64,000 nucleotides of DNA from Macrostomum lignano (taxonomy: Eukaryota): positions 62,001-126,000 of the forward strand of contig NIVC01000558.1 in NCBI GenBank assembly GCA_002269645.1. The letters run 5' to 3'. Within the stretch, counting starts at the first letter, position 1. Each line of letters starts with the position of its first letter. A program made the position numbers and the translations under genes. A model generated the notes under the pieces. The model had not been told where the DNA came from and did no database searches. It saw only the letters and a list, made by a program, of their open reading frames with translations. This document shows, piece after piece, positions 14,148 through 39,819 of this stretch.

Positions 14148-16496
14148 ATGTCATCCTCTCTATTCGTGCTTGACAACAACAGTACTGACAGTGACGGCGG
14201 CCCTGAGGGTCGCCGCCCACCGCCACCGCAAGCCAGCCGACTTGGCCCAGCTGCATTCGATGATGAAGACGATGCTCTGTTTGCCTCGGTGCCAATGCCA
14301 GACTTCGCTAATGACGATAATGCAGGCCTGGAGGCTGCGGCAGCTGACCCAGCAGTCACTGGTGCCCTGTCCTATGGAGCCGATTGCGAACAACGGCCTC
14401 AACGGCCGGCACCTTCCACCGTGCCGAAACGACAGCAGAATCGACCGGCGTCCTCTGTCCAAGCATCATCCGATGAGACAGTCTATCCAGTTGCTCAGTC
14501 AACTCAGCTGCCTTCTAGACAGCAGCATCCGCATCAGACACCAAAGCCGAAGCCGCCATCTTCTCATCGGCGCTCATCGTCAGGAAAATTTCCCGGGCCA
14601 GCTGGTCGACTGCCCCGACTAAAAGTGCCGCCGGATTCTGGTCGCGGCGGCCAAGGCGTGGCGAATGCGTTTGTCGAGGCTGCCAGGAAGTTGAATGCTG
14701 CGGCTTCCGCGGCCGCTGCTGCTGCCGCTGCGTCCAGGTGAACTTTGATGAGGGGGATTTGACAGAGAAAAAGGCTCTTAGATTCTTAGTGTCAGATTAG
14801 TGTCAGATTAGACTCTCAGTGTCAGATTAGACTCTTAGTGTCAAATTAGTCCCTTAGTGTCAGATTAGACTTTTAGTGTCAGATTAGACTCTTAGTGTCA
14901 GATTAGACTCTTAGTGTCAAATTAGTCCCTTAGTGTCAGATTAGACTTTTAGTGTCAGATTAGACTCTTAGTGTCAGAGTAGACTCTCAGTGTCAGAGTA
15001 GACTCTCAGTGTCAGAGTAGACTCTCAGTGTCAGATTAGACTCTCAGTGTCAGAGTAGACTCTCAGTGTCAGATTAGACTCTCAGTGTCAGATTAGACTC
15101 TTATTGTCAGCTTAGACTGTTTTTACCAGATTAGGCTCTTAGTTTCAGTTTAGACTGTTAGTGTCAGACTAGACTTTTTGTGTCAGATTAAACATTTAGT
15201 GTTAATTTAGACTGTTAGTGTCATCTCAGACTCAGATCAGTGTCAGCTCAGACTCGGATTAGTGTCAGCTCAGACTCTTAGTATCAGATTATACTAAGTG
15301 TCAGTGAAATCTCTTCATTCTGTTACTCAAATTGTAGCTCGTAATCAAATTGCAGACGAGAGGAGCGAGCTGCCACTGCTGGTGCTGGTGCCAGCGCTGT
15401 TGTCGCCGCCTCCTCGCAGACGTCGACAATCTCGAACGCTTCGTCATCGTCTGGCATTGACGAAGAGGCGTCCTGGTGCGCGGCAGCAGCGGACCTCGGG
15501 CCGGGTCTTTGCCGCTACCTCAGCCGCTACAGCATAGCGGAGTCCCTGCGGCTGGCCAGCAGCGGTCAGCTGCCCAGAAACAAAGTGCCAGCCATGCTAG
15601 TCATAGTTGAAACTATGGATCCTACAGCGGTAGATTGCGCCGCTAGCGTCAAGGACGCCACCGGACGTCTGCAAGCGACGCTGCACCGGCAGGTGTTTCG
15701 CGACCTTCGCGATCGGGTGCAACCTGGCGCGGCTCTGGTGCTCCGTCGGGTCACCCTGTTTAGCCCGGATCAGCGCAGTTACTATCTCAACATCACCATG
15801 GACAATATTGTTCGAGTCTACGATCGTTCCGGAGCTCCATTGCAATCGAATTCGTCTGCGACTGCAGCAGCTTCTACGCTTAGCAATGATGAAGTTCAAC
15901 GCCTGGAAGCTGAGTGCCTGCGGCCGAGGACTCCGCCGCCAAAGCGCGTGCCTGAGAGTCGGTACGATGTTTCCTCCGACTCAGGTAGCTCTAGTGCTGC
16001 TAGTTCGGCTACTCCTGTTAAAAGGTTCCGGTTTGCACCTGTTGGAACGCCTGAGCAGCATCCCCAGCAGCATCAGTCGCATCCTCAGTCTCGCCAGTCT
16101 TATCCTCAGCCTCATCAATCGCATCATCAGTCTCGCCAATCTTATCCCCAGCCTCATCAGCCGCATCCGCAATCTCGCCAATCTTATCCTCAGCCTCATC
16201 AGCCGCATCCGCAATCTCGCCAATCTTATCCTCAGCCTCATCAGTCGCATCCGCAATCTCGCCAATCTTATCCTCAGCCTCATCAGTCGCATCCGCAATC
16301 TCGCCAATCTTATCCTCAGCATCCTCAGCCTCATCCGCAATCTCGCCAATCTTATCCTCAGCATCCTCAGCCTCATCAAAATCAACAGCAGCGCAGCAGG
16401 CAGTCCTCGGACACTCGAGTATTGCAAGAGTCCTACAGGGAAGCATTCGAAGACAACATGGATGAATTATTGGCCAGCGCTTTGGACGATATTTGA
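14148..16496 (+). CDS. HROB: Homologous recombination OB-fold protein (MCM8/9 loader, C17orf53/MCM8IP orthologue)
   Basis: Exons 14148-14737 and 15356-16496 (phase 2, 576 aa). QLPRNKVPAMLVIV...VKDATGRLQATLHRQV...VQPGAALVLRRVTLFSPDQRSYYLNITMDNIVRVY matches the HROB OB-fold. Acidic C-terminal tip. Confidence 0.88.
14790..15300. repeat. 19-bp intronic minisatellite (agactcttagtgtcagatt)
   Basis: Tandem units fill the HROB intron. Confidence 0.9.
16060..16380 (+). repeat. Coding 42-bp minisatellite encoding (PQPHQSHPQSRQSY)n
   Basis: About 7 units, in frame within HROB exon 2. Confidence 0.85.
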
Positions 16497-16528
16497 AGGT
16501 TATTTTTGTGTTTTAACAGGACAAAAGC

Positions 16529-16534
16529 AATAAA
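16529..16534 (+). promoter_or_regulatory. Candidate poly(A) signal of HROB
   Basis: AATAAA about 30 nt after the stop codon, followed by U-rich sequence. Confidence 0.55.
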
Positions 16535-16989
16535 AATCTTTTCTATATATTATATACAGACATTTTTTCTCTTTCTGAACGGCTATTTTGTTTCTTGAAG
16601 CAGATTTCCATTAGAAATCCTGCATTTCCTTTATATTATAATTATAGCTATTAATATTTGTTTGTTTAATATAGTCTGAATTGGTGCTATGTTCTTAAAC
16701 TTGTTTACACGTGTCTTTGTTGACAAAACATCACTGTTGTACTTGAATAAGCCTGTTTTTTGTCGCATTTATTATATGCTGCTGTTTAAAAACAATGAAT
16801 AGTTAAAATTGAGTTTCCGTTCATTTATTCATAGTTAATATATGTATATATATAGTTGAGTTTGCATTCTGCTTTTGCAACTTTTTGGTTTAAAAAATAA
16901 GTTACTCATCTAAACACTTACAACTTCCCTAATTTCCCATGACTACCTGTCAGACTCACCAGCCCGTCTACCCAATCGTATCTGTCTGT

Positions 16990-17860
16990 CTAACTGCCTT
17001 TGTAGTGTTTACCTACCTACTTACCTTCCTTGCTCATATTTACCTGCCTATCTGCCTCGTCGCATCTGCCTACCTCTATACGAGATGCCAACCTACCTAC
17101 CTACCTACCTACCTGCCTACCTACATACCTACCCATGTAGCTACCTACCTACCTACCCATGTAGCTACCTACCTACCTACCCATGTAGCTACCCACCTTC
17201 CGACCTACCTACCTACCTATGTTGCTACCTACCTATCTTCTCCCCTCTCTCCCCTCTTCTCTCCTCTCCCATCCCCTCTCCTCTCCTCTTCTCTCCTTTC
17301 TCTCCTCTACCTACCGCCCTACTTATGTAGCTACCTACCTACCTACCTACCACCCTTTGTAGCTACCTACCTACCTACCTACTAAGTAGCTACCTAACTA
17401 CCTACCACCCTACCTTTGTAGCTAACTACCTAACTACCTACCAACCTACCTACCTACCTTATATACCTAACTACCTACCTACCTATGTAGCTACCCACCT
17501 ACGCACCTATCTACCTACCTACCTACCTACCTACCTACCTAACTACCTACCTACCTACCTAACTACCTATGTAGCTACCCACCTACGCACCTATCTACCT
17601 ACCTACCTACCTACCTACCTACCTACCTACCTACCTACCTAACTACCTATGTAGCTACCCACCTACGCACCTATCTACCTACCTACCTATCTATCTGCCT
17701 ATGTAGCTACCTACCTACCTACGCACCTACCTACTTGTATGTGTAGCTACTTACCTACCTACCTACCAATGTAGCTGTCTAAATACCTACCTATATATGT
17801 AGCTACCTACCTACCCACCCACGTACCTACCTGTCTACCTATCTACCTACCTACCTAACA
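16990..17860. repeat. (CTAC)n microsatellite with tgtag interruptions
   Basis: About 870 bp between HROB and UROD, ending just before a branch-like CTAAC and the acceptor TTGCAG. Confidence 0.95.
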
Positions 17861-17883
17861 GCACATTAACGCGTCTTGCAGCC

Positions 17884-20812
17884 ATGGCAACCGACGCGCC
17901 ATCCATCAAAGAAGCCGAGCTGGCCTCAGCAGCCGCTGTGCAAATTCCACCTGCCAGCAATTTCCCGGCGCTAAAGAACGACCTGATACTCCGCGCCGCC
18001 CGCCGTCAGCCGGTGCCCCGCGTGCCCGTGTGGCTGATGCGGCAGGCCGGCCGCTACCTGCCAGAGTTTAGGCAGACTCGGTCCAAGTATGACTTCTTCA
18101 CAATTTGCCGAACACCCAGCCTGGCTTGCGAGGTCACCCTACAGCCGATGCGCCGGTTCAACTTGGACGCTGCCATCATCTTCAGCGACATCCTGGTGGT
18201 GCCGCAGGCGCTGGGACTCGAGGTGGTCATGGTTGAAGGCAAAGGCCCGGTGCTGCCGAATCCCATTTCCGAGCCCAGCGATCTGGACCGCCTGCGCACT
18301 CCTGTTGATGTAGAGAAGGAGCTGGGCTATGTTATGCGGGCGATCACTCTGACCCGACACAGGCTTGATGGTGAGTTGCTCTCAACCTTCCTGGTTTCAG
18401 TCTATCATCCCTTAGGCTTATCTGTCACTCTCAGCCCAGGCCGATCTGTCACTCTCAGCCCAGGCCGATCTGTCACTCTCAGTTCAGGCCGATCTGTCAC
18501 TCTCAGTCCAAGCTGATCTGTCACTCTCAGTCCAAGCCGATCTGTCACTCTCAGCCCAGGCCGATCTGTCACTCTCAGCCCAGGCCGATCTGTCACTCTC
18601 AGCCCAGGCCGATCTGTCACTCTCAGCCCAGGCCGATCTGTCACTCTCAGTTCAGGCCGATCTGTCACTCTCAGTCCAAGCTGATCTGTCACTCTCAGTC
18701 CAAGCCGATCTGTCACTCTCTTGACTTACTTGACTTGGCCAGATGTGCAAATCCAATCTCACCCCAAACTGATCTGAATGTCACTCCTACTCCAGTCCAA
18801 TTTTACTCCAATCCAATTTTACTCTCATTCTCACTCAATCTAATCTCAATTTCACAAAAATCCATTCTCTGTCTAACATCAGTCTAATCTCACCCTCAAT
18901 CCAACCTCACTCTCACCCAAATCTAATCTCAATCTCACTCCGAATCTAATCTCATTCTCGCCCAAATTTAAATCTCACCCAACCCAGGTCAGGCCCCGCT
19001 AATCGGTTTCGCCGGTGCCCCCTGGACCCTGATGGCCTACATGATCGAAGGCGGCAGCTCCACCACCCACGCCAAGAGCAAGCGCTGGCTGTACGCTCAT
19101 CCGGCAGCCAGCAACCGTCTTCTAGACGCCATCACGGATGTTGTCATCGACTTCATGGTGGCGCAAATCCGCGCCGGTGCCCAGCTGGTGCAGCTGTTCG
19201 AGTCCCACTGCGGCTCGCTCACTCCCGAGCTGTTCCGCCGCTACGAGCTGCCTCGCCTGGCTCGCATCGCTGCTGAAACTCGTCGCCGACTAGGCGAAGC
19301 CGCCGTGCCGATGATCGCGTTCGCCAAGGACGGCCATTTCGCATTGGAGATGCTGGCCAAGGACTGCGGATTCGATGTGGTTAGCGTGGACTGGACTATG
19401 GAGCCGGCCGAGTGTCGTCGGAGGCTGGGCGACTGCCCGGTGGCTTTGCAGGGTGAGGGGATAATAGTTGCTTATACCGAAAGCTCAGCCGCAGCTATTG
19501 CACGGCGCATTTGAAGGCTGTGTACGGCTGTTCAGTCCAAGGACTGGGAGAGGGGGTCGCCACAGACACCCTCAATTGCTCCAGCTAATGCTGGCACCCA
19601 TTTTACAGCTGGGTGAACTGAAGCAATGCAGAGTTAAGTGTCTTGCTCAAGGATACAAATTGTTACAGAGGGATCAGGAATCGAACCCCCGACCTTCAAG
19701 TCGTGAGTTCGACGTTCTAATCACTAGGCTAGAACCCTAGGGGATTGAAGCTTGAGAAACTGCACGTTTGTTGTATTGTACAGTCTGCTTCGCATGCATG
19801 TGCTTATATAAGCCCAATATACTATCATGCACTTCTTATCCCAGCTCAATGTACACACTTTTCACCCCAGCCCAATGCACACACTTTTCACCCCAGCCCA
19901 ATGCACACACTTCACCCCAGCCCAATGTACACACTTTTCACCCCAGCCCAATGCACACACTTCACCCCAGCCCAATGCACACACTTCACCCCAGCCCAAT
20001 GCACACACTTCACCCCAGCCCAATGTACACACTTTTCAACCCAGCCCAATGCACACACTTCACCCCAGCCCAATGCACACACTTCACCCCAGCCCAATGC
20101 ACACACTTCACCCCAGCCCAATGTACACACTTTTCAACCCAGCCCAATGCACACACTTCACCCCAGCCCAATGCACACACTTCACCCCAGCCCAATGCAC
20201 ACACTTCACCCCAGCCCAATGCACACACTTCCTACCCCAGCCCAATGCACACATTTTTCACCCCAGCCCAATGTACACACTCCCTACCCCAGCCCAGTGT
20301 ACACCATGCACTTCCTACCCAGCTCAATGTACATCCTGAACCTCCTACCCCAGCCCAATGTACACCAGGCACTTCCTAACCCAGCCAATGTACATCACAC
20401 ACTTCCTACCCCAGCCAATGTACATCACACACTTCCTACCCCAGCCAATGTACATCACACACTTCCTACCCCAGCCAATGTACATCACACACTTCCTACC
20501 CCAGCCAATGTACATCACACACTTCCTACCCCAGCCAATCTGTACCAAGTGAGTTAGCCTTTGCCCTCCCTTAACTCCTATCTGCCGCACGCATCCGCAG
20601 GTAACCTGGACCCGGTGCTGATGGCCTGCACGGATCGCGACCAACTCAACCAGGAGGTGCACCGCATGCTGCAGGGTTTCGGCACCCGCGGCTACATCTG
20701 CAACCTGGGCCACGGCATCTATCCCGATGCCCAACCCGACACTGTTGGTGCTTTTATTGACGCGGTCCACCGGCTCTCCGAGTCTGCCGCTGCTGCCGCC
20801 GGGGACAAGTGA
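17884..20812 (+). CDS. UROD: Uroporphyrinogen decarboxylase
   Basis: Exons 17884-18370, 18988-19452 and 20601-20812 (387 aa). [55 protein letters not shown] and YICNLGHGI are all present. Confidence 0.97.
18420..18720. repeat. 24-bp intronic minisatellite (tctgtcactctcagcccaggccga)
   Basis: About 12 units in UROD intron 1. Confidence 0.92.
19482..19742 (-). mobile_element. tRNA-derived SINE with CORE-like central domain
   Basis: Minus strand: A-box TAGCCTAGTGATT and B-box GGTTCGATTCC, then ccttgagcaagacacttaac...cagctgtaaaatggg, which resembles the MIR/CORE domain. In UROD intron 2. Confidence 0.78.
19830..20550. repeat. 24/26-bp then 30-bp intronic minisatellite (ccccagcccaatgcacacacttca)
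   Basis: Tandem array in UROD intron 2. Confidence 0.92.
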
Positions 20813-21589
20813 CCCCCCCCCTGCCCCGGTGCCCCCCTCAAACTCATTAACTAGGCGCCTGTTCACCTTAAGAAATACTTTGCTTTTGCTATGTACCCAA
20901 AAATCCCTCAGGCAATACTCTTAATTATCCCCGATCACTGGGATTTCACAGGTATTAATTATCCCTAATCGCCAGGATCCCATAAGTATTAATTATCCTC
21001 AGTCTTACCGGGATGCCACAGGTATTGTTATCTTCAATCTTACCGGGATTTCACAGGTATTAATTATCCCTAAGCACCCCGGATCCACCAGGTATTAATT
21101 ATTCCCAATCCAAAAATCCCCCAGATACTAGTTATCCCAATAATTAATCGAATATTTCCAATGTCCCGTTAGGAGGGTTGGCAAAAGCAAATATTTTTAG
21201 CCCTATCAATTATTTTAAGCCTACTACTGATAATTAGTAGTCGGTAGTGTTTTTTAGTAGTTAATAATTTATGTAATCTGAGACCTGAGCAATTGTTTAG
21301 ATCAAGTGTTTATTTATAGTAGTGTAAAATGGTGACAATCGCTATAATATATAATATAGTATTATAATATATTATAAAAAAATCTATTATTAATGCAGCG
21401 AATCTATTATATGTAACCACAATTGTAATCGGATATAGTTTGCTTTACTATGGTGCATTTCTCTCTTGCTTTGACTCTAATAATAAATACTACTATTATT
21501 AGTGTTATATAGCATATGCTGGTGTTTTGAAGATGCTGTGTCTTAGAGCCTTCCTTTATCTGTTTTCTGAACACTAAGATAGGTGGACA

Positions 21590-22380
21590 CTAAAACAGGT
21601 AAGCACTAAGACAGTAGACGCTAAGACAGGTGGCCACTAAGACAGGTGGCCACTAAGACGAGTGAACACTAAAGTAGGTTAGACATCAAGACAGTTAGAC
21701 ATTAAGACAGAGTAGACATCAAGACAGGCAGACACCAAGACAAGATAGGCATTAAGACAGGCAGACACTAAGACAAAATAGGCATTAAGACGGGCAGACA
21801 CTAAGACAAGATAGGCATTAAGACAGGCAGACACTAAGACAAGATAGGCATTAAGACAGGCAGACACTAAGACAAGATATGCATTAAGACAGGCAGACAC
21901 TAAGACAAAATAGGCATTAAGACAGGCAGACACTAAGACAAAATAGGCATTAAGACAGGCAGACACTAAGACAAAATAGGCCTTAAGACAGGCAGACACT
22001 AAGACAAGATAGGCATTAAGACAGGCAGACACTAAGACAAAATAGGCATTAAGACAGGCAGACACTAAGACAAAATAGGCATTAAGACAGGCAGACACTA
22101 AGACAAAATAGGCATTAAGACAGGCAGACACTCGGATAGGCGGACACTGAGACAGGCAGATACTAGGACAGGCAGACACTAAGACAAGATAGGCATTAAG
22201 ACAGGCAGACACTAAGACAAGATAGGCATTAAGACAGGCAGATACTAGGACAGGCAGACACTAAGACAAGATAGGCATTAAGACAGGCAGACACTAAGAC
22301 AAGATAGGCATTAAGACAGGCAGACACTCGGACAGGCGGACACTAAGACAGGCAGATACTAGGACAGGCAGACACAGACA
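21590..22380. repeat. 33-bp minisatellite (ttaagacaggcagacactaagacaaaataggca)
   Basis: Tandem array between UROD and the LOTUS/Tudor gene. Confidence 0.92.
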
Positions 22381-22457
22381 GGCAAACATTAAGAATGGGT
22401 AGCTAAAAGACCAGTAGACCATCAGCTTTGACTACAAGAGTATCTTTTCTTCATGCC

Positions 22458-25400
22458 ATGGCCTCAGAGCTGGGGACGCTGAAAAGCTTTCTAATCGCCT
22501 CCGTTGCTGTTAACGGCAATAAATCCAGCGAGCACGTGACCGTCCGCTCTCTGCTCGACGCTTACAAGCGGCTGTTTGGCAGCCCCATGCCTCTAGGCAA
22601 GTTGGGCCACACCAGCCTCGAAAGCCTCATCACTAATGCAATGTCAGACACCTTCCAGCTGTACAGGTAACATGCGCGATTGGGTGATCAAATCGAACCT
22701 GGGACCTCCTTGGATGTTTTAGTTTCCAAAATGATTGCGTGTTTAAATATCACAGACACTTTTCTCTATCTAGGAATCGCGCGGGTTCTGATCTCACGAA
22801 TCCTAATCCCAAAATCCCCATTGCTATTATCCCTATCCCAAATCCCAAAATCCCCTCTGCTATTATCTCAATCCTCAAATCCCGAAATCCTCTCTTCTAT
22901 TATCCCTTTCCCAAATCCCACAGCTATTATTCCAATTCTAGAATCCCAGAGCTATTATCACAAATCCCAAAATCCCACAGCTATTATCCCCATCCCAAAT
23001 CCCAAAATTCCACAGCTATTATCCCCATCCCAAATCCCAAAATCCCACAGCTATTATCCCCATCCCAAATCCCAAAATCCCACAGCTATTATCCCCATCC
23101 CAAATCCCAAAATACCACAGATATTATCCCCATCCCAAAATCCCTCAGCTAATATCCCAATCCAAAATTCCACAGAATGGGATCCGAGCAGTGCGTCCGC
23201 TGTCTGGTGCAGCCAGCTGGACAGAACATAATCGAAATGATACGCAATGAGAAGCAGCCGAAGAAGAAAAAGCAGAAAAATCGTTTTCGCGGCTCGTGTC
23301 GTTATCGTGAAGGCGGCGGCGGTGGCAGTATGGGAGGAGCTAAAAAGTCCAAGAAGTCATCCCAGACTGCTAGCCAGCGGCTGAGCGCTCCGCCGTCGCT
23401 GCCTTCGTCGCACTCGCAGTCTCAGCAGCCGCCCATCGGTTTGTTCAACGTTCGGCCTCCTCCAGTGTCCCAACGGCCGCCGCCGCCTCAGGACAGCCGG
23501 AGTCAGTCATCAAGCGGCATTCCAGCCGAGATTCGAGCCCGGGTAGCCGAACTTGCTGCCAGTTATCCCGGCTTTGCCGTCGCTAATTTTGACAATCAAT
23601 TTCTGAAATATTTCGGCACACGACTGCCGTTTAAACAGTTGGGCTTTGCAAATTTGCTAAGCATGATGCAGCGCTTGGAGAGTCTGGGCGATGTTCAGCT
23701 GTTCAACATGCGCAAGGATGTCGTAGTCTTGTCGCCGGGTGCCATGCAGCGAAGTCGAATGTCTCTGGATGATTCAAACAAAGAGAATTCGTTGTTAAAA
23801 AATTCTTCTGCTAGCCGTCCACCGGCCTCTGTTGCTAGGGACGCCGATCCGTTGCTAGGATCGCCTAGCAACCAAAGCAATCCGGTTGCTAGGGATGCCG
23901 ATTCGTTGCTAGGATCGCCTAGCAACCCAGGTAATCTGGTTGCTAGCGACGCGGCTGTTCCTCCATCGCTGGTTGTGCACGTGCACCGTCAGTCGCTGGA
24001 CGGCCGGATGGTGCGCTGGCGAGAGGTGCCGCTCTCCAAGTCGGCTTTGGTTACCATGACAACCGCTAGTAGCATTGTTGACAGTGACGACGCCAGTAGC
24101 AGACGCAGCGACGTGCCGAAAGACTGCGTGTCGCCGCATCACCGACTGCCGCTGGGTCTGCGCCGGCTGGCCAGCTCCGACGGCCTCGTTGCCGTCGAGG
24201 TGATCTCAGCCGACAGTCCCAACGACCTAGTGCTCAGCGTTCGCGACTGCCGACTCACCGAGCGACTTGAGCGACTGCCAACCAGCATGGCGGCTTGGCC
24301 CGCCGACCGCTGGTGCTGCCTGGCCGCGCGTCACGTGATCCCCGGCGCCCTGTGCGTAGCCAGGCTGGGCGGTCGGCACCATCGGGCTCGGATTGACCGC
24401 CTGTCACCCAATCAGCAGCAGCCGCCGCAGGTTCGCCTTATCGACATGGGCGGCATTGTGACTCAGGCCCGAGTGTCGGATCTGTTCTACTTGCCCAGGC
24501 AGTTTGCTGACGACACGGCTCCGGCTGTTCTGCTGCACGCAGCGGTGGCCAATGTGCGCCTGTTCAGCGCCAAGAATGGCGCCGCTGCCGGCTTTATGCG
24601 ACAGCTGCTGCTGAAGGCCAGTCAAAGCAGGGATGGACCGGTGACTGTCCGACTGCCGCCAGGACTCAACAGGGAGCCGCTGGATCAGGTGAGCTGCTGT
24701 CTGTGAGCTGTGTCTTCTCACTCCGCAATGGAGTATCTCTGCTGCTCATCCTTGGTTATCTTAATCTTTTTTCTCATCAGTGTGTTACCCCTTTCTGCAG
24801 CTTGTCATCCCAATCCGTCAGTATCTCGCTCTTATATTTTAAGCTCCCGTCATTGTCTCACCTCATCGTATCAGTATCTCACCCTACCTCATCAGTATCT
24901 ACCCCATCCTATCGGTATCTCACCCTATCCCATCATATCTCACCCTATCCCATCAGTATCCCATCCCAACAGTATCTCACCCCATCCCAACAGTATCTCA
25001 CCCCATCCCATCAGTATCTCACCCCATCCCATCAGTATCTCACCCCATCCCATCAGTATCTCACCCCATCTATTCAGTATCTCACCCCATCCCATCAGTA
25101 TCTCACCTCATCCCATCAGTATCTCACCCCATCCCATTGGTATCTCACCCCATCCCATCAGTATCTCACCTCATCCCATCAGTATCTCACCCCATCCCAT
25201 TGGTATCTCAACCCATCCTATCAGTATCTCACCCCATCCCATTGGTATCTCACCCCATCCCATTAGTATCTCACCCCATCCCATCAGTATCTCACCCCAT
25301 CCCATCAGTATCTCACCCCATCCTATATCTACCCCCATCTCCTACAGTGCCGAGTGCCAGTCGAGTTTGTCTCACCGCCGCTTGCCGATCAGCTCGTCAA

Positions 25401-26921
25401 GGAAGGCTTCGGTGGGAGCATTCAGGACGCCGCTTTTGTAAGTTTTTTATGCTAATTATTTATTATAATGAGCTTAGTTTAACATTACAACTATTTAGGG
25501 AAATTCCTCCTGACATGACATCATTTGCTGCGTCGAACCGGAGCAACGCAGGCACGTGAAATTAAAGAATAACAAAACAAAAATCTAATCGCCAGCTCCG
25601 GCCGTACAGTCGAGAGCCATCCCGGTGCCAGTTCCCCGGTGCCATCTGTTGAAAGTCCGATGGCGTCGAGGTGATGACGGAATGCTTGAGAGACAAGCTG
25701 AGGATGTCCGGTAGTTGAGGTTTGCCCACTGTCGAGGCTTGATCCGCGAAACTGGAGAAATTTGCAACAGGGTGTCCATAGTCACCTGGTGGCATCTGTT
25801 GAAGGTCCTGACGGCGTCGGGGGGTGATGACGGAATGCTTGAGAGACAAGTTGAGGATGTCTGGCAGTTGATGATTGGCCACTGTCGAGGCTTGATCAGC
25901 GAAACTGGAGAAATTCACAACAGGGCGTCCATAGTCACCTGGTGGCATCTGTTGAAGGTCCTGACGGCGTCGAGGTGATGACGGAATGCTTGAGAGACAA
26001 GCTGAGGATGTCTGGCAGTTGATGATTGCCCACTGTCGAGGCTTGATCAGCAAAACTGGAGAAATTCACAACAGGGCGTCCATAGTCACCTGGTGGCATC
26101 TGTTGAAGGTCCTGACGGCGTCGGGGTGATGACGGAATGCTTGAGAGACAAGCTGAGGATGTCTGGCAGTTGATGATTGCCCACTGTCGAGGCTTGATCA
26201 GCGAAACTGGAGAAATTCACAACAGGGCGTCCATAGTCACCTGGTGGTATCTGTTGAAGGTCCTGACGGCGTCGGGGTGATGACGGAATGCTTGAGAGAC
26301 AAGTTGAGGATGTCTGGCAGTTGATGATTGCCCACTGTCGAGGCTTGATCAGCGAAAATGGAGAAATTCACAACAGGGCGTCCATAGTCACCTGGTGGCA
26401 TCTGTTGAAGGTCCTGACGGCGTCGGGGTGATGACGGAATGCTTGAGAGACAAGTTGAGGATGTCTGGTAGTTGATGATTGCCCACTGTCGAGGCTTGAT
26501 CAGCGAAACTGGAGAAATTCACAACAGGGCGTTCATAGTCACCTGGTGGCATCTGTTGAAGGTCCTGACGGCGTCGGGGTGATGACGGAATGCTTGAGAG
26601 ACAAGTTGAGGATGTCTGGCAGTTGATGATTGCCTACTGTCGAGGCTTGATCGGCGAAACTGGAGAAATTTGCAACATGGTGTCCATAGTCACCTGGTGG
26701 CAGAATCGTTGAATATCTCGACGGTCTGGAGAGCTGGCGACTTGACTCTTTTTTGAGAATGTACGCAAAAAAAGTCGTCACATGTCTGCGTTGCTTTGTT
26801 CAGACGCAGCAAAAATACGCCTTAGTATTTTCTTCTATTGACTAATTTTCCAAACAAATAATTCTTATTGCAGCAAACTCTGAAGTCGGATCTGCTTGCT
26901 GCATTGCCGCCTGCAAACTAA
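22458..26921 (+). CDS. LOTUS (OST-HTH) x2 + Tudor domain protein, TDRD5/Tejas-like
   Basis: Exons 22458-22666, 23176-24688, 25348-25437 and probably 26874-26921 (619 aa). LOTUS-like LLDAYKRLFGSPMPLGKLGHTSLESLI and FLKYFGTRLPFKQLGFANLLSMM. Extended Tudor PGALCVARLGGRHHRARI...VRLIDMG. The last exon is less certain. Confidence 0.8.
22790..23170. repeat. About 35-bp intronic minisatellite (cacagctattatccccatcccaaatcccaaaatcc)
   Basis: Intron 1 of the LOTUS/Tudor gene. Confidence 0.88.
24880..25340. repeat. 21-bp intronic minisatellite (cagtatctcaccccatcccat)
   Basis: Intron 2 of the LOTUS/Tudor gene. Confidence 0.92.
25524..26813. mobile_element. Foldback-like element: imperfect inverted termini enclosing about 7 copies of a 151-bp unit
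   Basis: The left end tttgctgcgtcgaaccggagcaacgcaggcacgtga (25524-25559) pairs with 26778-26813. Inner IR tcgccagctc (25589-25598) pairs with gagctggcga (26731-26740). Unit starts at 25673, 25826, 25977, 26128, 26279, 26430 and 26581. No TSD seen. Confidence 0.65.
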
Positions 26922-27349
26922 ACAAAAGCATGCGTAAAATGAATCGAGTTTTTGGTGCTGAAATGCTTGACTAAACTTACCTTGTCAACCTCTTCTTGTC
27001 AGTTAGCTTTGTAATAACCATGGAAACGAATTTAATTTCATGGATTATTTATTTTTATCCCTGCTGCTAGATACTACTTGTAACTAGCTAAACGGACAGT
27101 AGTATAATAAAAAATAAGACGTCTGCTCCAATTGCAAGTGCAATTTTCAGTGCAGTGATTATACATTGCATAAGTCACCTGCATTTTAGTTGAGTACTTT
27201 ACTCACTTTTTTTCTGTGTGCTGCTTACAATCTCTCATTCAGAGCCTATCTCTAACCTGTAGCTTTTTAAATATAGTTGAAGTATTCTTTGTTATTGGAA
27301 ACTGTCTTTGTCTTTCGTTATTTTGTTCTGTCTTTTTTTAGATTTTTAA

Positions 27350-28040
27350 TCTCTCACCTGTGATTTCTAATCTCACCTGTGGTTTCAAATCTCACCTATG
27401 ATTTCCAGCCTCACCTGTGGTTTCAAATCTCACCTATGATTTCCAATCTCACCTGCGATTTCCAATCTCTCACCTGTGATTTCCAATCTCTCACCTGTAA
27501 TTTCCAATCTCTCACCTGTGATTTCCAATCTCTCACCTGTGATTTCCAATCTCACCTGTGGTTTCAAATCTCACCTGTGATTTCCAATCTCACCTGTGCT
27601 TTCCAATCTTACCTGTGATTTCCAATCTTACCTGTGATTTCCAATCTTACCTGTGGTTTCAAATCTCACCTGTGATTTCCAATCTCACCTGTGATTTCCA
27701 ATCTCTCACATGTGATTTCCAATCTCTCACCTGTGATTTCCAATCTCACCTGTGATTTCCAATCTCACCTGTGATTTCCAATCTCACCTGTGATTTCCAA
27801 TCTCTCACCTGTTATTTCCAATCTCTCACCTGTGATTTCCAATCTCTCACCTGTGATTCCAATATCTCAACTGTGATTTCCAATCTCTCACCTGTGATTT
27901 CCAATCTCTTACCTGTGATTTCCAATCTTGTACGTGTGATTTCCAATCTCACCTGTGATTTCCAATTTCACCTGTGATTTCCAATTTTACCTGTGATTTC
28001 CAATTTCACCTGTGATTTCCAATTTCACCTGTGATTTCCA
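27350..28040. repeat. 19-21-bp minisatellite (tctcacctgtgatttccaa)
   Basis: Runs directly into the first ORC1 exon. Confidence 0.92.
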
Positions 28041-28058
28041 ATGCCAGCACCAGAGCTC

Positions 28059-31000
28059 ATGGACCCGCCGCCACCGCCACCAAGAGGCCAGCAGCGCCGT
28101 CTGTCTGTACGCCGCAGTGTCAGCGCGCCGAAGCCGCAGACCTCGGTTCTGCAGCCTTCCAACCTGCAGAATCAGCCGAATCTCGATGAGAGCATCAGCG
28201 CCTCTGGCACACCTGCCAAACAGCCGTGTCGCCGAAGTACTCGGATGTCTGCTGCCAATGCCTCCATTTCGGTGAGAGATGCTTGTTAAATAGTCAACGC
28301 TGGGATTGCTTGGGTCATGACCTGGGTCCTCATCGCGGTCATGACCTGGGTCCTCATCGGGGTCATGACCTGGGTCCTCATCGGAGTCATGACCTGGGTC
28401 CTCATCGGGGTCATGACCTGGATAACTCGATTTTTCTTTGGGGTCATGACCTGGATTCTTTGGTGTCATGACCTAGATTCTTCTTTAGGGTCATGACCTA
28501 GATTCCTCATTGGGGTCATCACCTAGATTCTCTTTTGCGTCATGACCTAGATTCTTCTTTTGGGTCATGACCTAGATTCTTCTTTTGGGTCATGACCTAG
28601 ATTCTTTGGGGCCATGACCTAGATTCCTTATTGGGGTCATCACCTAGATTCTCTTTTGGGTGATGACCTGGATTCTCTTTTGGGTGATGACCTAGATTCT
28701 CTTTTGGGTGATGACCTAGATTCTCTTTTGGGTGATGACCTAGATTCTCTTTTGGGTGATGACCTAGATTCTCTTTTGGGTGATGACCTAGATTCTCTTT
28801 TGGGTGATGACCTGGATTCCTCATTAGGGTCATCACCTAGATTCTCTTTTGGGTGATGACCTGGATTCCTCATTGGGGTCATCACCTAGATTCTCTTTTG
28901 GGTGATGACCTGGATTCTCTTTTGGGTGATGACCTGGATTCCTCATTGGGGTCATCACCTAGATTCTCTTTTGCGTCATGACCTAGATTCTTTGGGGCCA
29001 TGACCTAGATTCCTTATTGGGGTCATCACCTAGATTCTCTTTTGGGTGATGACCTGGATTCTCTTTTGGGTGATGACCTAGATTCCTCAGTGGCCTGGAT
29101 TCCCCATGAGGATTTGGATCATGACCTAGATGCCTCATTAGGATTGGGGTCATGACCTGGATTTCTCATAAGGGTCATGACCTGGATTCCTCAATTGGGG
29201 TCATGACCTGGATTCCTCATTGAGATTGGGGTCATGACCTGGATTCCTCAATTGAGTCATGGCCCGGTCATCGCTCCCGCAGATCAGCCACATTCTGTCG
29301 CACGACTTCAACCGCTTGAGCCTGAACCCGACTGGCAGACGCTCGCAGCAGAGAACGCCTCGAAAGCCTCCGCCGTTGAAGTGCCCGTTGCCGCCGTCGC
29401 CTGAACTGACACCGCCGCCGGTGCCGCCCATGCCGCCCAAGTCGACAGTCGGAGCTTCCGACACGCCTCGTCGGAGCGTCGCACGAAAAACTCCCGGCTT
29501 CTACGCGGAACAGCCGACTTCGCCGCGTCCGCTGCACCAAGCCGCCACCGACCTTGACGACGATCCTGATGTCGACGAAGACTTCGAGCCGTCAGAGTCC
29601 TCAGATGAGGATGACGATGAAGATGTCGACGAGGGCAGCGACGACTCGGAGGACAGCGACGAGACAGATGACGACATCGACGGCGAGGAAGACCTGGACG
29701 ACCTCGAGGACGACGTGGCGAGCGTCGACTCGATGGACGTCACCTTGGCTGGCGACCTGCTGGCTCGTGACGGCTCGCCCTGCGGCAAATCGCGTCAGGT
29801 GAGACCCGATCCGCCCCCTCAAGGCCAATCCGCTCCCTCCTTCAGGCCAATCCGCCCCTTCCTCAGACTAATCCGCCCCTTCCTCAGACTAATCCGCCCC
29901 TCTTCTCCGCCCCCGCAGGCCGGCCGTCGGATGTCGCGCGCGTCGCCCCTGCCGGCTTCGCCGCTGCTCCGTGACTCCGACATTCGCTTGCCGAACCGGC
30001 GCGGCGCTGGAAATCGTCGATCAACGGCGCCAATCGACGAGGCGCGCCAACGCCTACAAGCGCGCGAGGCGCCAAGAATTTTGCCCTGCCGACATGACGA
30101 ATTCCAAGCGGTGTTCAGCTTCGTTGAGAGCCGCCTGCGTCAGGAGGGCGGCTGCGGCGGCTGCCTGTTCATCAGCGGCGTGCCCGGCACCGGCAAGACG
30201 GCCACCGTCATGGAGGTCCTGCGCCAAGTTGCCGACATGCCCGATCTGCCTCCATTTGACACCGTGTTAGTCAACGGGATGAAGGTTACCGAGCCTAAGC
30301 GGGTGTACTCTGCCATTGTGCGACAGCTGCATAAGGTTTGTGCTCAGATCCCACTGCCATCTCTAATTCCCATCTCAGATCCCACTGCCATGCCAATTCC
30401 CATCTCAGATCCCACTGTCATCCCAATTCCCATCTCTGATCCCACTGTCATCCCAATTCCCATCTCTGATCCTACCCGAATCCCATTAGAAGTCCCACCC
30501 GATTTCCCATTTGAAATCCCACCCAAATCCTGCTCTAAAATCCTACCCCATTGTCCATCTCAGATCTAACCCGAATCTTCATTTGAGATCCCACCCGATT
30601 TCCCATCTCAGATCTCACACGAATCCTTACCTCAAATCCCACACGAATCCCCATATCAGATCCCACACCAATCCCCATCTCAGATCCCACACCAATCCCA
30701 TCTCAGATCCCACACCAATCCCATCTCAGATCCCACACCAATCCCATCTCAGATCCCACCCGATTTCCCATCTCAGATCCCACACGAATCCTTACCTCAG
30801 ATCCCACACGAATCCCCATCTCAGATCCCACACGAGTCCTTATCTCAGATCCCACACGAATCCCATCTCAGATCCCACACGAATCCCCATCTCAGATCCC
30901 ACACGAATCCCCATCTCAGATCCCACCCGTTTATCCCATCCCGACAGGTCCGCGCCCCCTGGCAGGCAGCCCTCCGCCGGCTCAAGTCGGAGTTCAACAG

Positions 31001-32708
31001 CGCCAGAGGGCGTCCCTGCGTGCTGCTGGTTGACGAGCTGGACATGCTGTGCAACCGGCGCCAGGACGTGCTCTACAATCTGTTCGAATGGCCACAGAAT
31101 CCTAACTCGCGCCTCATCGTGCTGGCCATTGCCAACACTATGGACCTGCCCGAGCGGGTCCTTGTGCACCGGGTGGCCTCCCGGCTGGGCCTGAGCCGTC
31201 TGGTGTTCCAGGCCTACAGCCACGATCAGCTGATGGAGATTGTGCGCTCCCGCATCTCCAAGCTGCACATCTTTGAGGATAAGGCGGTTGAAATGGCAGC
31301 GAGAAAGGTGGCTGCTGTTAGCGGGGACGCCAGGTGAGTGGGTCAGCCTTGGCCAAGCTAGCATGGGTCAGCAAGGTGGGTCAAGCTAGCATGGGTCAGC
31401 CAGGTGGGTCAGGCTAGCATGGGTCAGGTCAAGCTTGAATGGTTCAGCCAGGTGGGTCAAGCTGGCATGGGTCAGCAGGTGAGTCAAGCTTGAATGGGTC
31501 AAGCTAGCATGGGTCAGCCATGTGAGTCAAGCTAGCATCGGTCAGCCAGGTGGGTCAAGCTAGCATGGGTCAGCCAGGTGAGTCAGGCTAGCATGGGTCA
31601 GGTCAAGCTTGAATGGTTCAGCCAGGTGGGTCAAGCTAGCATGGGTCAGCCAGGTGGGTCAGGCTAGCATGGGTCAGGTCAAGCTTGAATGGTTCAGCCA
31701 GGTGGGTCAAGCTGGCATGGGTCAGCAGGTGAGTCAAGCTTGAATGGGTCAAGCTAGCATGGGTCAGCCATGTGAGTCAAGCTAGCATCGGTCAGCCAGG
31801 TGGGTCAAGCTAGCATGGGTCAGCCAGGTGAGTCAGGCTAGCATGGGTCAGGTCAAGCTTGAATGGTTCAGCCAGGTGGGTCAAGCTGGCATGGGTCAGC
31901 CAGGTGGGTCAAGCTTGAATGGGTCAAGCTAGCATGGGTCAGCCAGGTGGGTCAAGCTTGAATGGTTCAGCCAGGTGGGTCAAGCTGGCATGGGTCAGCA
32001 GGTGAGTCAAGCTTGAATGGGTCAAGCTAGCATGGGTCAGCCAGGTGGGTCAAGCTAGCATGGGTCAGCCAGGTGGGTCAGGCTAGCATGGGTCAGGTCA
32101 AGCTTGAATGGTTTAGCCAGGTGGGTCAAGCTAGCATGGGTCAGCCAGGTGGGTCAAGCTTGAATGGATCAATCAGGTGGGTCAGTCAGCTCCGAACTCT
32201 CCTTCCCCATTCCCCCAGACGCGCCCTGGACCTGTGCAGCCGCAGCTGTGACCTGGCCGAACAGGAGTTCGGGCCGCAGCAGATGCAGCGGATGAATCTG
32301 CAGGTGGGCATGAAACACGTGAACGCGGCCATCGCTGAGATGTTCGCCGGGCCGGTGATCACAGCTGTGGCCAACCAGCTTAGCGAGTACGAACGGCTCA
32401 CCCTGCGGGCCTGCCTGTCCCAGCGACTCGAGTCCGGCCGAGACGAGAACCCGGTTGGCCGGGTCTGGCGCTCAGTGCTCAACATCGCCAGGTCGGAGGG
32501 CCTTGAGGCGCCCAGTTGGCCGGCGCTTTGCGTCTGTCTCGGCTGTCTGCACGCCATGCGGCTGCTGCTGTGGGACGGCGGGCACCGGGGCCTGGCTGGT
32601 CGGGTCATCATCAACTGCTCGCCTCAGGACGTGCAGCTCGGGCTGGGCGAGCTGAAACAGACGCCAAAACCGACGGCCGAACAGCAATTGCCGAGACTGG
32701 CCGACTGA
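28059..32708 (+). CDS. ORC1: Origin recognition complex subunit 1
   Basis: Exons 28059 (or 28041)-28271, 29283-29798, 29919-30335, 30948-31333 and 32219-32708 (about 673 aa). Walker [28 protein letters not shown], Walker [44 protein letters not shown] and a winged-helix C-terminus. Confidence 0.93.
28310..29250. repeat. 24-bp intronic minisatellite (gatgacctagattctcttttgggt)
   Basis: ORC1 intron 1. Confidence 0.92.
30345..30940. repeat. C-rich intronic minisatellite (ccatctcagatcccacacgaatc)
   Basis: ORC1 intron 3. Confidence 0.88.
31340..32190. repeat. G-rich intronic minisatellite (gggtcagccaggtgggtcaagctagcat) with about 250-bp higher-order duplication
   Basis: ORC1 intron 4. The landmark gccatgtgagtcaagctagcatcgg occurs at about 31518 and 31768. 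Confidence 0.9.
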
Positions 32709-33319
32709 TTGTGGGGGCTTTGATTGCCTGGAGTCGCTTTTGATAATGAAGGAAATTTAGTCAGTTTGTTATTGAGGGGAATTTAGTCTGTTTGTTATAT
32801 TGAGGGGAATTTAGTCTGTTTGTTATATTGAGGGGAATTTAGGCAGTTTGTTATATTGAGGGGAATTTAGGCAGTGTCATATTTGACAATTTAATGGTTT
32901 GAAGCTACGAAATTGCTCATTACATTTATTACTGTCCTGCGATCTCCGCTGTCTGCAGTCCATGCGGCTGTTTATTAAAATTGGTTTATTTTTTAACGCG
33001 ACTTATTTGCATTTTCTTATACACCCCAGCGTTAGGTGCTTATGAATTTACGGCATTTTATTATTAAATTTCAATATTTTTTCAAAAGCCTAACTTTAAA
33101 GTGAGTCTGATGTAGTTTCGACTGAATGAAAATATTTCCGACATATTAATAAACTTAAAGTCAGCGTTTTCAACAAAAAAATTGAATTTTACCTTCCAAT
33201 AAATTTCTAAATGATACTAATACAAAAGGTTAATTTTTCTCATGAAAGTTCGAGGAAGGGATGAAGAGCAAGCTGGGAAAAATCGGCATAAAACTGCTTT
33301 TTAACTGGAAAGAACCTGC

Positions 33320-34690
33320 ATGATGTTATCTCAGTTTAGGGGTGATGGAGTGCAATGACTCAATCATCTCAGTTTAGGGGTGATGGAGAGCAATGACTCA
33401 ATCATCCCAGTGTGGGGGTGATGGAGAGCAATGACTCAATCATCCCAGTGTGGGGGTGATGGAGAGCATGACTCAATCATCTCAGTTTAGAGGTGATGGA
33501 GTGCATGACTCAACCATCTCAGTTTAGAGGTGATGGAGAATAATGGCTCAATCGTCTCAGTGTGGGGGTGATGGAGAGCAATGACTCAATCATCCCAGTG
33601 TGGGGGTGATGGAGAGCAATGACTCAATCATCCCAGTGTGGGGGTGATGGAGAGCAATGACTCAATCATCCCAGTGTGGGGGTGATGGAGAGCAATGACT
33701 CAATCATCCCAGTGTGGGGGTGATGGAGAGCAATGACTCAATCATCTCAGTGTGGGGGTGATGGAGAGCATGACTCAATCATCTCAGTGTGGGGGTGATG
33801 GAGAGCAATGACTCAATCATCTCAGTGTGGGGGTGATGGAGAGCAATGACTCAATCATCTCAGTGTGGGGGTGATGGAGAGCAATGATTCAATCATCTCA
33901 GTGTGGGGTGATGGAGAGCAATGACTCAATCATCTCAGTGTGGGGGTGATGGAGAGCAATGACTCAATCATCTCAGTGTGGGGGTGATGGAGAGCAATGA
34001 CTCAATCATCTCAGTGTGGGGGTGATGGAGAGCAATGACTCAATCATCTCAGTGTGGGGGTGATGGAGAGCATGACTCAATCATCTCAGTGTGGGGGTGA
34101 TGGAGAGCAATGACTCAATCATCTCAGTGTGCGGTGATGGAGAGCATGACTCAATCATCTCAGTGTGGGGTGATGGAGAGCAATGACTCAATCATCTCAG
34201 TGTGCGGTGATGGAGAGCAATGACTCAATCATCTCAGTGTGCGGTGATGGAGAGCAATGACTCAATCATCTCAGTGTGCGGTGATGGAGAGCAATGACTC
34301 AATCATCTCTGTGTAGGGTGATGGAGAGCATGACTCAATCATCTCAGTGTGGGGGTGATGGAGAGCAATGACTCAATCATCTCAGTGTGCGGTGATGGAG
34401 AGCATGACTCAATCATCTCAGTGTGGGGTGATGGAGAGCAATGACTCAATCATCTCAGTGTGCGGTGATGGAGAGCAATGACTCAATCATCTCAGTGTGC
34501 GGTGATGGAGAGCAATGACTCAATCATCTCAGTGTGCGGTGATGGAGAGCAATGACTCAATCATCTCTGTGTAGGGTGATGGAGAGCATGACTCAATCAT
34601 CTCAGTGTGGGGGTGATGGAGAGCAATGACTCAATCATCTCAGTGTGGGGGTGATGGAGAGCAATGACTCAATCATCCCAGTGTGGGGTG
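33320..34690. repeat. About 39-bp minisatellite (catctcagtgtgggggtgatggagagcaatgactcaat)
   Basis: About 35 contiguous units with no spacers. Confidence 0.95.
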
Positions 34691-35086
34691 ATGGCTCATG
34701 GAGACACACACACAGTTCTTTCGCGTTGATCTCAGTTTTGCGTTCAGCTGTTCCCTCTCACCCTCTCGGCGCATTTGAAGTCAAACTGTTTATACTGTAA
34801 AGCACAACGAATTATAAATTTTTCTCGTGTGAAACAATCGCACTTATCTGATTCCAAGTATGAAGATTGCAGGGTACGGCGCATTTTGCGTACAGTTTAG
34901 CAAAGACAACTAATTAATAAGCAGGTGCAGATGTACCTCAGAATTACTTGCAGTGCAAGGATACGCTTCAGTCTAACTGTTCACAGACCAAAATCTTAGG
35001 CCTGGATTGTCGCTTCTTATAGCCGCATTCTGTTGCCGCTTAGACAACTTAGATACTTAGTTGTGGAATCTAGTCCAGACAGAGAG

Positions 35087-37155: not shown

Positions 37156-37189
37156 TTTTAGCATGCTTCAACTGGCCGAGTGAAAGCAA

Positions 37190-39757: not shown

Positions 39758-39819
39758 GTCGGTCTGGGCGACCTGCAGGCTGCTGCGGGCATTGGATTAA
39801 GTCTGTCCTTAACTGAAGG

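What the first reader, a model, noticed from the sequence alone, without database searches (positions are those of the whole stretch)
14148..32708. Candidate four-gene trans-spliced operon: HROB - UROD - LOTUS/Tudor - ORC1
Four unrelated genes lie on + with only 1.1-1.7 kb between stop and next ATG, and about half or more of each gap is minisatellite. The gaps are built like the introns, with a tandem array running up to a 3' splice site close to the ATG. UROD has CTAAC...TTGCAG|ccATG (AG at 17880-17881, ATG at 17884). ORC1 has tttccaatgcCAG/cacCAG|agctcATG. The Tudor gene has only weak AGs (22425, 22438). No upstream non-coding exon or promoter is evident. SL trans-splicing and polycistronic loci are established in flatworms; applying that here is inference. 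Three of the four are replication/germline genes, suggesting a stem-cell/germline cassette.
Basis: partly seen in the sequence, partly recalled or inferred. Interest (0 to 1): 0.7.

Follow-up and report, generated by a model that had tools for sequence, protein, structure and literature searches.

The report
Already-annotated flatworm trans-spliced operon locus

Summary
Four unrelated genes lie on the + strand: HROB, UROD, LOTUS/Tudor and ORC1. The stop-to-ATG gaps are 1387, 1645 and 1137 nt, and tandem arrays fill 55-62% of each.

The window is Macrostomum lignano assembly Mlig_3_7, scaffold NIVC01000558.1. In the public annotation UROD, LOTUS/Tudor and ORC1 are Mlig011148.g5, g6 and g7. The shared prefix marks one assembled transcriptional unit that was cut into genes using trans-splice and poly(A) signals. 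A published table flags UROD and ORC1 as TRANSSPLICED and as stringent neoblast genes. UROD cDNAs from two related species begin with the Macrostomum spliced leader.

HROB has a different unit prefix (Mlig028826.g2) in all three genomic copies of the locus. It still passes the published distance rule for operons (repeat-adjusted gap under 1 kb).

Repeat-inflated gaps between operon genes were described genome-wide for this species in 2021.

Verdict: a real three-gene operon that is already annotated. HROB membership is open, and I found no trans-splicing flag for the Tudor gene. This is a known kind of feature and of low interest.

The parts
14148..16496 (+). HROB gene (CDS exons 14148-14737 and 15356-16496; 576 aa). 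It is BOX15_Mlig028826g2 / PAA80912.1. It contains a coding 42-nt repeat at 16060-16377.
   Evidence: Pfam HROB 2.4e-22. Model built. Exact match to the NCBI protein.
16497..17883 (+). Gap 1 (1387 nt). It holds the HROB AATAAA at 16529-34, AT-rich unique sequence up to about 17090, an (ACCT)n array at 17091-17857, CTAAC at 17855-59, an AG at 17860-61, and TTGCAG at 17876-81, the likely SL acceptor for UROD.
   Evidence: TTGCAG fits the published YTNCAG trans-splice motif. The annotation has HROB and UROD in different units.
17884..20812 (+). UROD gene (CDS exons 17884-18370, 18988-19452, 20601-20812; 387 aa). It is Mlig011148.g5 / PAA80913.1, flagged TRANSSPLICED and 'Neoblast, stringent'.
   Evidence: Orthologue cDNAs L001 and L002 start with the Macrostomum SL.
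20813..22457 (+). Gap 2 (1645 nt). It comprises the UROD 3'UTR with a 35-nt array at 20921-21110, AATAAA at 21482-87, a 16/33-nt array at 21571-22394, and weak AGs at 22401-02, 22424-25 and 22437-38. About 90 nt of non-repeat sequence lies between the poly(A) region and the Tudor start.
   Evidence: The in-frame stop at 22404 is.
22458..26921 (+). LOTUS/Tudor gene (CDS exons 22458-22666, 23176-24688, 25348-25437, 26874-26921; 619 aa). It is Mlig011148.g6 / PAA80914.1.
   Evidence: Pfam OST-HTH 2e-10 and TUDOR 6.6e-5. Model. Exact NCBI match.
26922..28058 (+). Gap 3 (1137 nt). It holds AATAAA at 27106-11, a 19-nt array at 27352-28042, the SL acceptor CAG at 28045-47, and a second CAG at 28051-53.
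   Evidence: The deposited ORC1 CDS is 5'-partial and starts at 28050, which implies an mRNA 5' end at 28048.
28048..33175 (+). ORC1 gene (ATG at 28059; CDS exons 28059-28271, 29283-29798, 29919-30335, 30948-31333, 32219-32708; AATAAA at 33148-53). It is Mlig011148.g7 / PAA80915.1, flagged TRANSSPLICED and neoblast-stringent. It has no BAH domain.

Best explanation
The window is Macrostomum lignano (Mlig_3_7 scaffold NIVC01000558.1, about 62001-126000).

**Proposed mechanism.** UROD, the LOTUS/Tudor gene and ORC1 are transcribed as one polycistronic pre-mRNA. Each upstream cistron is cleaved and polyadenylated at its single AATAAA. The 35-nt Macrostomum spliced leader is trans-spliced onto an acceptor a few nucleotides upstream of the next ATG: TTGCAG|CC for UROD and CCAG|CACC for ORC1. 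The gaps between cistrons were originally short, about 90-225 nt of unique sequence. Minisatellite arrays have inflated them to roughly 0.9 kb.

**HROB.** HROB lies directly upstream on the same strand. It may be the first cistron, but more likely it is a separate transcription unit ending at its own AATAAA (16529).

**What is shown.** Gene identities, gap anatomy, the shared unit name, and published TRANSSPLICED flags for UROD and ORC1.

**What is inferred.** True co-transcription from a single promoter, trans-splicing of the Tudor gene, and HROB's status.
For: **Source of the window.** L004 (NIVC01000558.1:80050-104708) is identical to window 18050-42708.

**Shared unit name.** The NCBI names of the window's own proteins are UROD Mlig011148g5, Tudor Mlig011148g6 and ORC1 Mlig011148g7. 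The prefix names a cluster of assembled transcriptional units at least 95% identical. Those units were then cut into genes by the TBONE pipeline using SL-read and poly(A) peaks (PMC5730564). Three unrelated genes can share a prefix only if they came from one unit.

**Other copies.** A second copy shows the same pattern (g1, g2, g3 on NIVC01001204.1). In the third copy Tudor and ORC1 share a unit (Mlig027593g1 and g2).

**Trans-splicing.**
- PMC5816591 supplementary file 2 flags Mlig011148.g5 and g7 as {TRANSSPLICED} and 'Neoblast, stringent'.
- The 5'-partial ORC1 CDS begins 3 nt after CAG 28045-47.
- The same signature appears in the neighbouring SLD5 gene, which is independently flagged TRANSSPLICED.
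- UROD cDNA contigs from two related species begin with 22 and 11 nt identical to the 3' end of the M. lignano SL.

**Gap anatomy.** Each gap has exactly one AATAAA. Repeat-adjusted lengths are 446-631 nt from stop to ATG, and roughly 560, 90 and 225 nt from the poly(A) signal. All fall under the published 1-kb operon threshold, and gaps 2 and 3 are near the published ~100-nt mode.

**Comparison with other non-coding sequence.** The gaps are array-rich like introns, whereas the region upstream of HROB has no arrays.
Against: - A transcriptional unit assembled from short reads (StringTie/TACO) can merge neighbouring same-strand genes through read-through. It is not proof of a single promoter.
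- I found no SL flag for the Tudor gene. The stored supplementary table is truncated.
- Apart from UROD's, the acceptors do not fit the YTNCAG motif.
- Raw gaps exceed 1 kb. In the other two copies gap 2 is 3.1-3.9 kb and carries a 1.3-kb unique insertion.
- The published mRNA lengths (1893 and 2477 nt) fit my coordinates only to within a few tens of nucleotides.
- The three genomic copies are 95-98% identical everywhere, so shared gene order among them is not independent evidence.
Confidence: 0.7

Rival explanations
1. This is a full four-gene operon. HROB is the promoter-proximal cistron, and the promoter in the AT-rich region upstream of 14148 drives all four genes. The annotation splits HROB off only because RNA-seq reads cannot be placed in the 767-nt (ACCT)n array.
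For: - HROB is on the same strand with no intervening gene.
- UROD is trans-spliced.
- The repeat-adjusted HROB-UROD distance is about 560-620 nt, or about 385 nt if the degenerate start of the array is also counted. That is under the 1-kb rule of PMC8629364.
- The 2021 paper itself says assembled units tend to split in repeat-rich gaps inside operons.
- Gap 1 is array-rich like an intron, while the 2 kb upstream of HROB has no arrays.
- The cluster is bounded by opposite-strand genes on both sides: DHHC upstream and SLD5 downstream.
Against: - HROB has its own unit prefix in all three copies: Mlig028826g1, Mlig028826g2 and Mlig003933g1.
- The unique part of gap 1 is several-fold longer than in gaps 2 and 3 and far from the ~100-nt mode. 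It is AT-rich (32% GC), like the presumed promoter region upstream of HROB.
- HROB did not appear in the stored part of the neoblast table, though that file is truncated.
Confidence: 0.3
2. There is no operon. Each gene has its own promoter in the preceding gap. UROD and ORC1 are monocistronic genes whose 5' outron (array plus unique sequence) is removed by SL trans-splicing. The shared unit is an artefact of read-through or of transcript assembly.
For: - Only about 40% of trans-spliced M. lignano genes are assigned to operons.
- Raw gaps are 1.1-1.7 kb here and up to 3.9 kb in the other copies.
- Regions up to 2 kb upstream sufficed as promoters in M. lignano transgenes.
- In one copy the unit is split between UROD and Tudor.
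Against: - The shared unit name recurs in independent copies.
- Only about 90 and 225 nt of non-repeat sequence lie between the upstream poly(A) signal and the next gene in gaps 2 and 3.
- UROD, a heme-synthesis housekeeping enzyme, is co-classified with ORC1 as a stringent neoblast gene.
Confidence: 0.2

Closest known systems
Macrostomum lignano SL trans-spliced operons and transcriptional units (Wudarski et al. 2017, PMC5730564; Ustyantsev & Berezikov 2021, PMC8629364)
   Same: It is the same species and the same locus. There is a single 35-nt SL ending in ATG. The genes lie on one strand, the downstream genes are trans-spliced, and the gaps are inflated by repeats with short repeat-adjusted distances. 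The enrichment for conserved neoblast genes also matches. UROD, Tudor and ORC1 already carry one unit name.
   Different: Nothing differs in kind. The only addition would be HROB as a fourth cistron, which the annotation does not show.
Caenorhabditis elegans operons (SL2-type)
   Same: A polycistronic Pol II transcript is resolved by 3'-end formation coupled to SL trans-splicing. Functionally unrelated genes are mixed with growth and germline genes.
   Different: C. elegans uses a dedicated SL2 for downstream genes, and its gaps are about 100 nt (established knowledge; summarised in PMC8629364). Here there is one SL for all genes and the raw gaps are about 0.9-1.3 kb, mostly minisatellite.
Operons of Ciona / Oikopleura and Schistosoma mansoni
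   Same: A single SL class serves both monocistronic and operon genes.
   Different: Tunicate operons have almost no gap between cistrons, and S. mansoni has few operons (as cited in PMC8629364). Neither is known for arrays filling the gaps.

Membership tests
M. lignano SL operon (criteria of Ustyantsev & Berezikov 2021) | Adjacent genes on the same strand, not interrupted by an opposite-strand transcript | tested here: met
   All four genes are on +. The NCBI accessions PAA80912-80915 are consecutive. The only minus-strand ORFs in the gaps derive from arrays.
M. lignano SL operon (criteria of Ustyantsev & Berezikov 2021) | The downstream gene of each pair is SL trans-spliced | tested here: inconclusive
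   UROD and ORC1 carry published TRANSSPLICED flags, supported by SL-bearing orthologue cDNAs and the 5'-partial ORC1 CDS. No flag was found for Tudor because the table is truncated.
M. lignano SL operon (criteria of Ustyantsev & Berezikov 2021) | Repeat-adjusted intergenic distance under 1 kb | tested here: met
   After subtracting TRF arrays, 620, 631 and 446 nt remain from stop to ATG, and less from the poly(A) signals. RepeatMasker-type repeats were not subtracted, so these are upper bounds.
Polycistronic transcription unit (general definition of an operon) | One pre-mRNA spans the cistrons | tested here: inconclusive
   For UROD-Tudor-ORC1 the published annotation gives one unit prefix. 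For HROB-UROD it gives different prefixes in all three copies. No read-level data could be examined here.
Polycistronic transcription unit (general definition of an operon) | A single promoter upstream of the first cistron and none inside | not testable with these tools
   This needs RAMPAGE/CAGE, chromatin marks or reporter assays.
C. elegans-type operon | A specialised downstream SL (SL2) and a gap of about 100 nt | tested here: not met
   Only one SL is described for M. lignano. Raw gaps from the poly(A) signal to the acceptor are about 0.9-1.3 kb.
ORC1 (versus CDC6) | The AAA+/winged-helix region is closer to ORC1 than to CDC6, and an N-terminal BAH domain is present | tested here: inconclusive
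   Similarity is 7e-93 to ORC1 chains versus 3e-41 to CDC6. BAH (PF01426) is absent, although most animal ORC1 hits have it.

The most novel reading that the evidence does not exclude
HROB is in fact the first cistron of a four-gene neoblast operon. The minisatellite arrays abutting every 3' splice and trans-splice site would then not be neutral filler. They would supply reiterated branch-point-like or pyrimidine-rich elements (for example CTAAC within the (ACCT)n array, TCTCAC in the 19-mer) that help recruit the splicing and SL machinery across long spacers.
Probability: 0.08. Interest if true: 0.45.

Novelty: already known. Interest (0 to 1): 0.15.

Why it matters
It shows that a reader working from raw sequence alone correctly recognised a spliced-leader operon. 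The locus and the phenomenon are already in the literature and in the public annotation of M. lignano. That includes operons whose gaps are swollen by repeats and which are enriched for stem-cell genes.

The remaining open point is small but testable in a species with working transgenesis: does HROB share the promoter of the UROD-Tudor-ORC1 unit? The answer bears on how reliable the 1-kb repeat-adjusted distance rule is for calling operons.

Tried and rejected
**Leads that gave nothing**
- I looked for an SL RNA gene in the window. Only chance-level matches to the SL 3' end turned up. There were no Rfam or tRNA hits.
- I looked for M. lignano RNA-seq contigs carrying the exact proteins, to read their 5' ends. 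Only NCBI genome contigs hold them.
- The homologue search for the Tudor protein returned only M. lignano itself, so there was no orthologue cDNA to check for the SL.
- I searched supplementary tables for flags on Tudor (g6, g2, Mlig027593.g1) and HROB (Mlig028826, Mlig003933). None are in the stored text, and other papers hold no supplements.

**Tests that could not discriminate**
- I compared the three genomic copies for sequence constraint in the gaps. They are 95-98% identical everywhere, CDS included, so the comparison is uninformative.
- I tested whether G/C skew of the arrays marks the transcribed strand. Intronic arrays are mixed (-0.82 to +0.31), so it does not discriminate.

**Considered and rejected**
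- CDC6 instead of ORC1.
- The UniProt fusion models as evidence of co-transcription. A0A1I8H7J5 fuses HROB and UROD (964 aa), and A0A1I8JGS0 fuses Tudor and ORC1 (1179 aa). They look like gene-prediction run-ons that use the SL acceptors as ordinary acceptors, and the HROB part is frame-shifted.
Full report
**What is in the sequence**

The region 14148-32708 holds four multi-exon genes on the + strand. Pfam identifies them as follows:
- HROB, with an OB-fold domain at 2.4e-22.
- Uroporphyrinogen decarboxylase (UROD), across three exons.
- A protein with a LOTUS/OST-HTH domain (2e-10) and a Tudor domain (6.6e-5, just above the curated cut-off).
- An AAA+/Cdc6-ORC protein.

The last is ORC1, not CDC6. 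It scores 7e-93 against human ORC1 chains and 3e-41 against CDC6.

I built spliced models with canonical GT-AG introns. All four match deposited proteins residue for residue.

**The gaps**

| Gap | Stop to next ATG | TRF-masked | AATAAA | Non-repeat nt from poly(A) signal to next gene |
|---|---|---|---|---|
| HROB to UROD | 1387 nt | 55% | 16529 | about 560 |
| UROD to Tudor | 1645 nt | 62% | 21482 | about 90 |
| Tudor to ORC1 | 1137 nt | 61% | 27106 | about 225 |

Each gap has exactly one AATAAA, and each array runs to within 5-65 nt of the next ATG.

The ten introns are 79% array. The 2 kb upstream of HROB has none. Three other intergenic stretches have 6-16%, while the convergent region 33176-38441 has 48%.

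**Where the window comes from**

The Tudor protein is 96% identical to a Macrostomum lignano protein. The ORC1 protein is 100% identical to BOX15_Mlig011148g7. The locus fetched for that protein, NIVC01000558.1:80050-104708 of assembly Mlig_3_7, is base-for-base identical to window 18050-42708. The window is therefore M. lignano, about 62001-126000 of that scaffold.

Two further copies of the whole locus exist in the same assembly: NIVC01001222.1 (L003) and NIVC01001204.1 (L005). Both have the same gene order, and in L005, whose flanks reach that far, a DHHC gene lies on the opposite strand upstream of HROB as in the window. SLD5 copies are present on all three contigs. The copies are 95-98% identical in coding and non-coding unique sequence alike. 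They are recent duplicates and give no independent evidence of constraint.

**What the published annotation says**

Exact look-up gives these names:

| Copy | HROB | UROD | Tudor | ORC1 |
|---|---|---|---|---|
| Window | Mlig028826g2 | Mlig011148g5 | Mlig011148g6 | Mlig011148g7 (partial) |
| L005 | Mlig028826g1 | Mlig011148g1 | Mlig011148g2 | Mlig011148g3 |
| L003 | Mlig003933g1 | Mlig011148g4 | Mlig027593g1 | Mlig027593g2 |

According to Wudarski et al. 2017 (PMC5730564), the prefix names a cluster of assembled transcriptional units at least 95% identical. Many of those units proved to be trans-splicing precursors containing several genes. The TBONE pipeline cut them into genes at experimentally mapped SL and poly(A) peaks.

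Three unrelated genes can share a prefix only if they came from one unit. So UROD-Tudor-ORC1 is already annotated as a polycistronic unit in two copies, and Tudor-ORC1 in the third. HROB is in its own unit in all three.

**Trans-splicing evidence**

- Supplementary file 2 of Grudniewska et al. 2018 (PMC5816591) lists Mlig011148.g5 (UROD, length 1893) and Mlig011148.g7 (ORC1, length 2477) as {TRANSSPLICED} and 'Neoblast, stringent'.
- The deposited ORC1 CDS is 5'-partial and starts PELMDPP at window 28050. An in-frame ATG lies at 28041, so the transcript must begin between 28042 and 28050. The only AG that fits is 28046-47, giving an mRNA start at 28048.
- The neighbouring SLD5 gene (Mlig009982.g4) is independently flagged TRANSSPLICED. 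It shows the same signature: a partial CDS starting one base after CAGCAG. This validates the inference.
- By the same logic, the complete UROD CDS favours the TTGCAG acceptor at 17876-81 over the AG at 17860-61.
- Again by the same logic, the complete Tudor CDS implies its mRNA includes the in-frame stop at 22404. AG 22401-02 or a CAG within the array remain possible.
- The best UROD homologues (77% identity) are cDNA contigs from two sequencing runs of related species. They begin with 22 and 11 nt identical to the 3' end of the M. lignano SL, CGGTCTCTTACTGCGAAGACTCAATTTATTGCATG. The SL is known to be conserved across Macrostomum (PMC10468722).

**Comparison with what is known**

Ustyantsev & Berezikov 2021 (PMC8629364) report the following for M. 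lignano:
- 30% of genes are trans-spliced and 15% lie in operons.
- Operon size is mostly two or three genes, up to nine.
- Repeats inflate the gaps between operon genes. After subtracting repeats the distance peaks near 100 nt, and 1 kb is used as the cut-off.
- The acceptor motif is [T/C]TNCAG.
- 85% of neoblast genes are trans-spliced and 39% are in operons.

By the paper's distance rule all three gaps qualify. Gaps 2 and 3 sit near the 100-nt mode. Gap 1 does not, which agrees with HROB being annotated as a separate unit. However, the paper also warns that assembled units break in repetitive gaps, and (ACCT)n is exactly such a sequence.

**Conclusion**

- Probability about 0.7: UROD-Tudor-ORC1 is a genuine SL-resolved operon.
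- Probability about 0.3: HROB is a fourth, promoter-proximal cistron.
- Probability about 0.2: there is no co-transcription and each gene has its own promoter.

None of this is new. The locus is annotated and the architecture is published.

Noticed in passing
window 28059-32708 (ORC1 protein): This ORC1 has no BAH domain. Its first ~270 residues are low-complexity, proline- and acid-rich sequence. Most animal ORC1 hits in the same search carry PF01426.
   Followed up: partly
window 38442-39778 (-) and 42047-44060 (-): SLD5/GINS4 (Mlig009982.g4) lies convergent to ORC1. It is flagged TRANSSPLICED and neoblast-stringent, and its 5'-partial CDS starts just after CAGCAG at 39779. An LRR gene lies 2.3 kb upstream on the same (-) strand with arrays in between, so this may be a second operon. 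It also places a third replication gene in the neighbourhood.
   Followed up: partly
L005 about 9990-10000 (equivalent to window 17876-17881): In the third genomic copy the UROD acceptor reads TTGCTG instead of TTGCAG. The upstream CTAACAG is intact in all copies. That copy must use another acceptor, or its annotation rests on multi-mapping reads.
   Followed up: no
L005 6653-8981: The HROB copy on NIVC01001204.1 (Mlig028826g1, 582 aa) is frame-shifted within the OB-fold region. It is either a decaying duplicate or an assembly indel.
   Followed up: no
L003 7861-9185 and the matching part of L005: A 1.3-kb, 55% GC insertion sits inside the 16-nt array of the UROD-Tudor gap in the other two copies and is absent from the window. 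It has no match elsewhere in the window and may be a non-autonomous mobile element.
   Followed up: partly
window 16060-16377 and 23831-23952: Minisatellites also occur inside coding sequence. A 42-nt repeat encodes a 14-residue H/P/Q/S-rich unit in HROB, and a 54-nt repeat lies in the Tudor gene. Copy number differs between genomic copies (576 vs 590 aa; 619 vs 637 aa).
   Followed up: no
window about 19455-19745 (UROD intron 2): A sequence resembling the 3' half of a tRNA in antisense orientation (ggttcgattcc-type T-arm) looks like a tRNA-derived SINE. ARAGORN and Rfam do not call it.
   Followed up: no
window 17882 and 28048 (predicted mRNA 5' ends): The ATG that ends the spliced leader is out of frame with the UROD and ORC1 start codons. 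It would open overlapping upstream ORFs of 31 and 87 codons.
   Followed up: partly
UniProt A0A1I8H7J5 (964 aa) and A0A1I8JGS0 (1179 aa): Older gene models fuse HROB with UROD and Tudor with ORC1. They use the trans-splice acceptors as ordinary acceptors. This is a typical mis-annotation caused by operon structure.
   Followed up: yes
window 35249-37055 (+): Unannotated + strand ORFs have a weak Receptor L domain match (E 0.0015, below cut-off) and furin-like cysteine spacing, 2.5 kb downstream of ORC1. This may be a receptor tyrosine kinase pseudogene fragment.
   Followed up: partly
window 55573-59506 (-): A PIF1-like helicase (9e-63) lies next to ORFs with weak, sub-threshold matches to RPA-type OB folds, the gene content of a Helitron-type element.
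   Followed up: partly
window 4498-4535: There is a short interstitial TTAGGG telomere-type repeat next to a phospholipase A2 gene on the - strand.
   Followed up: no
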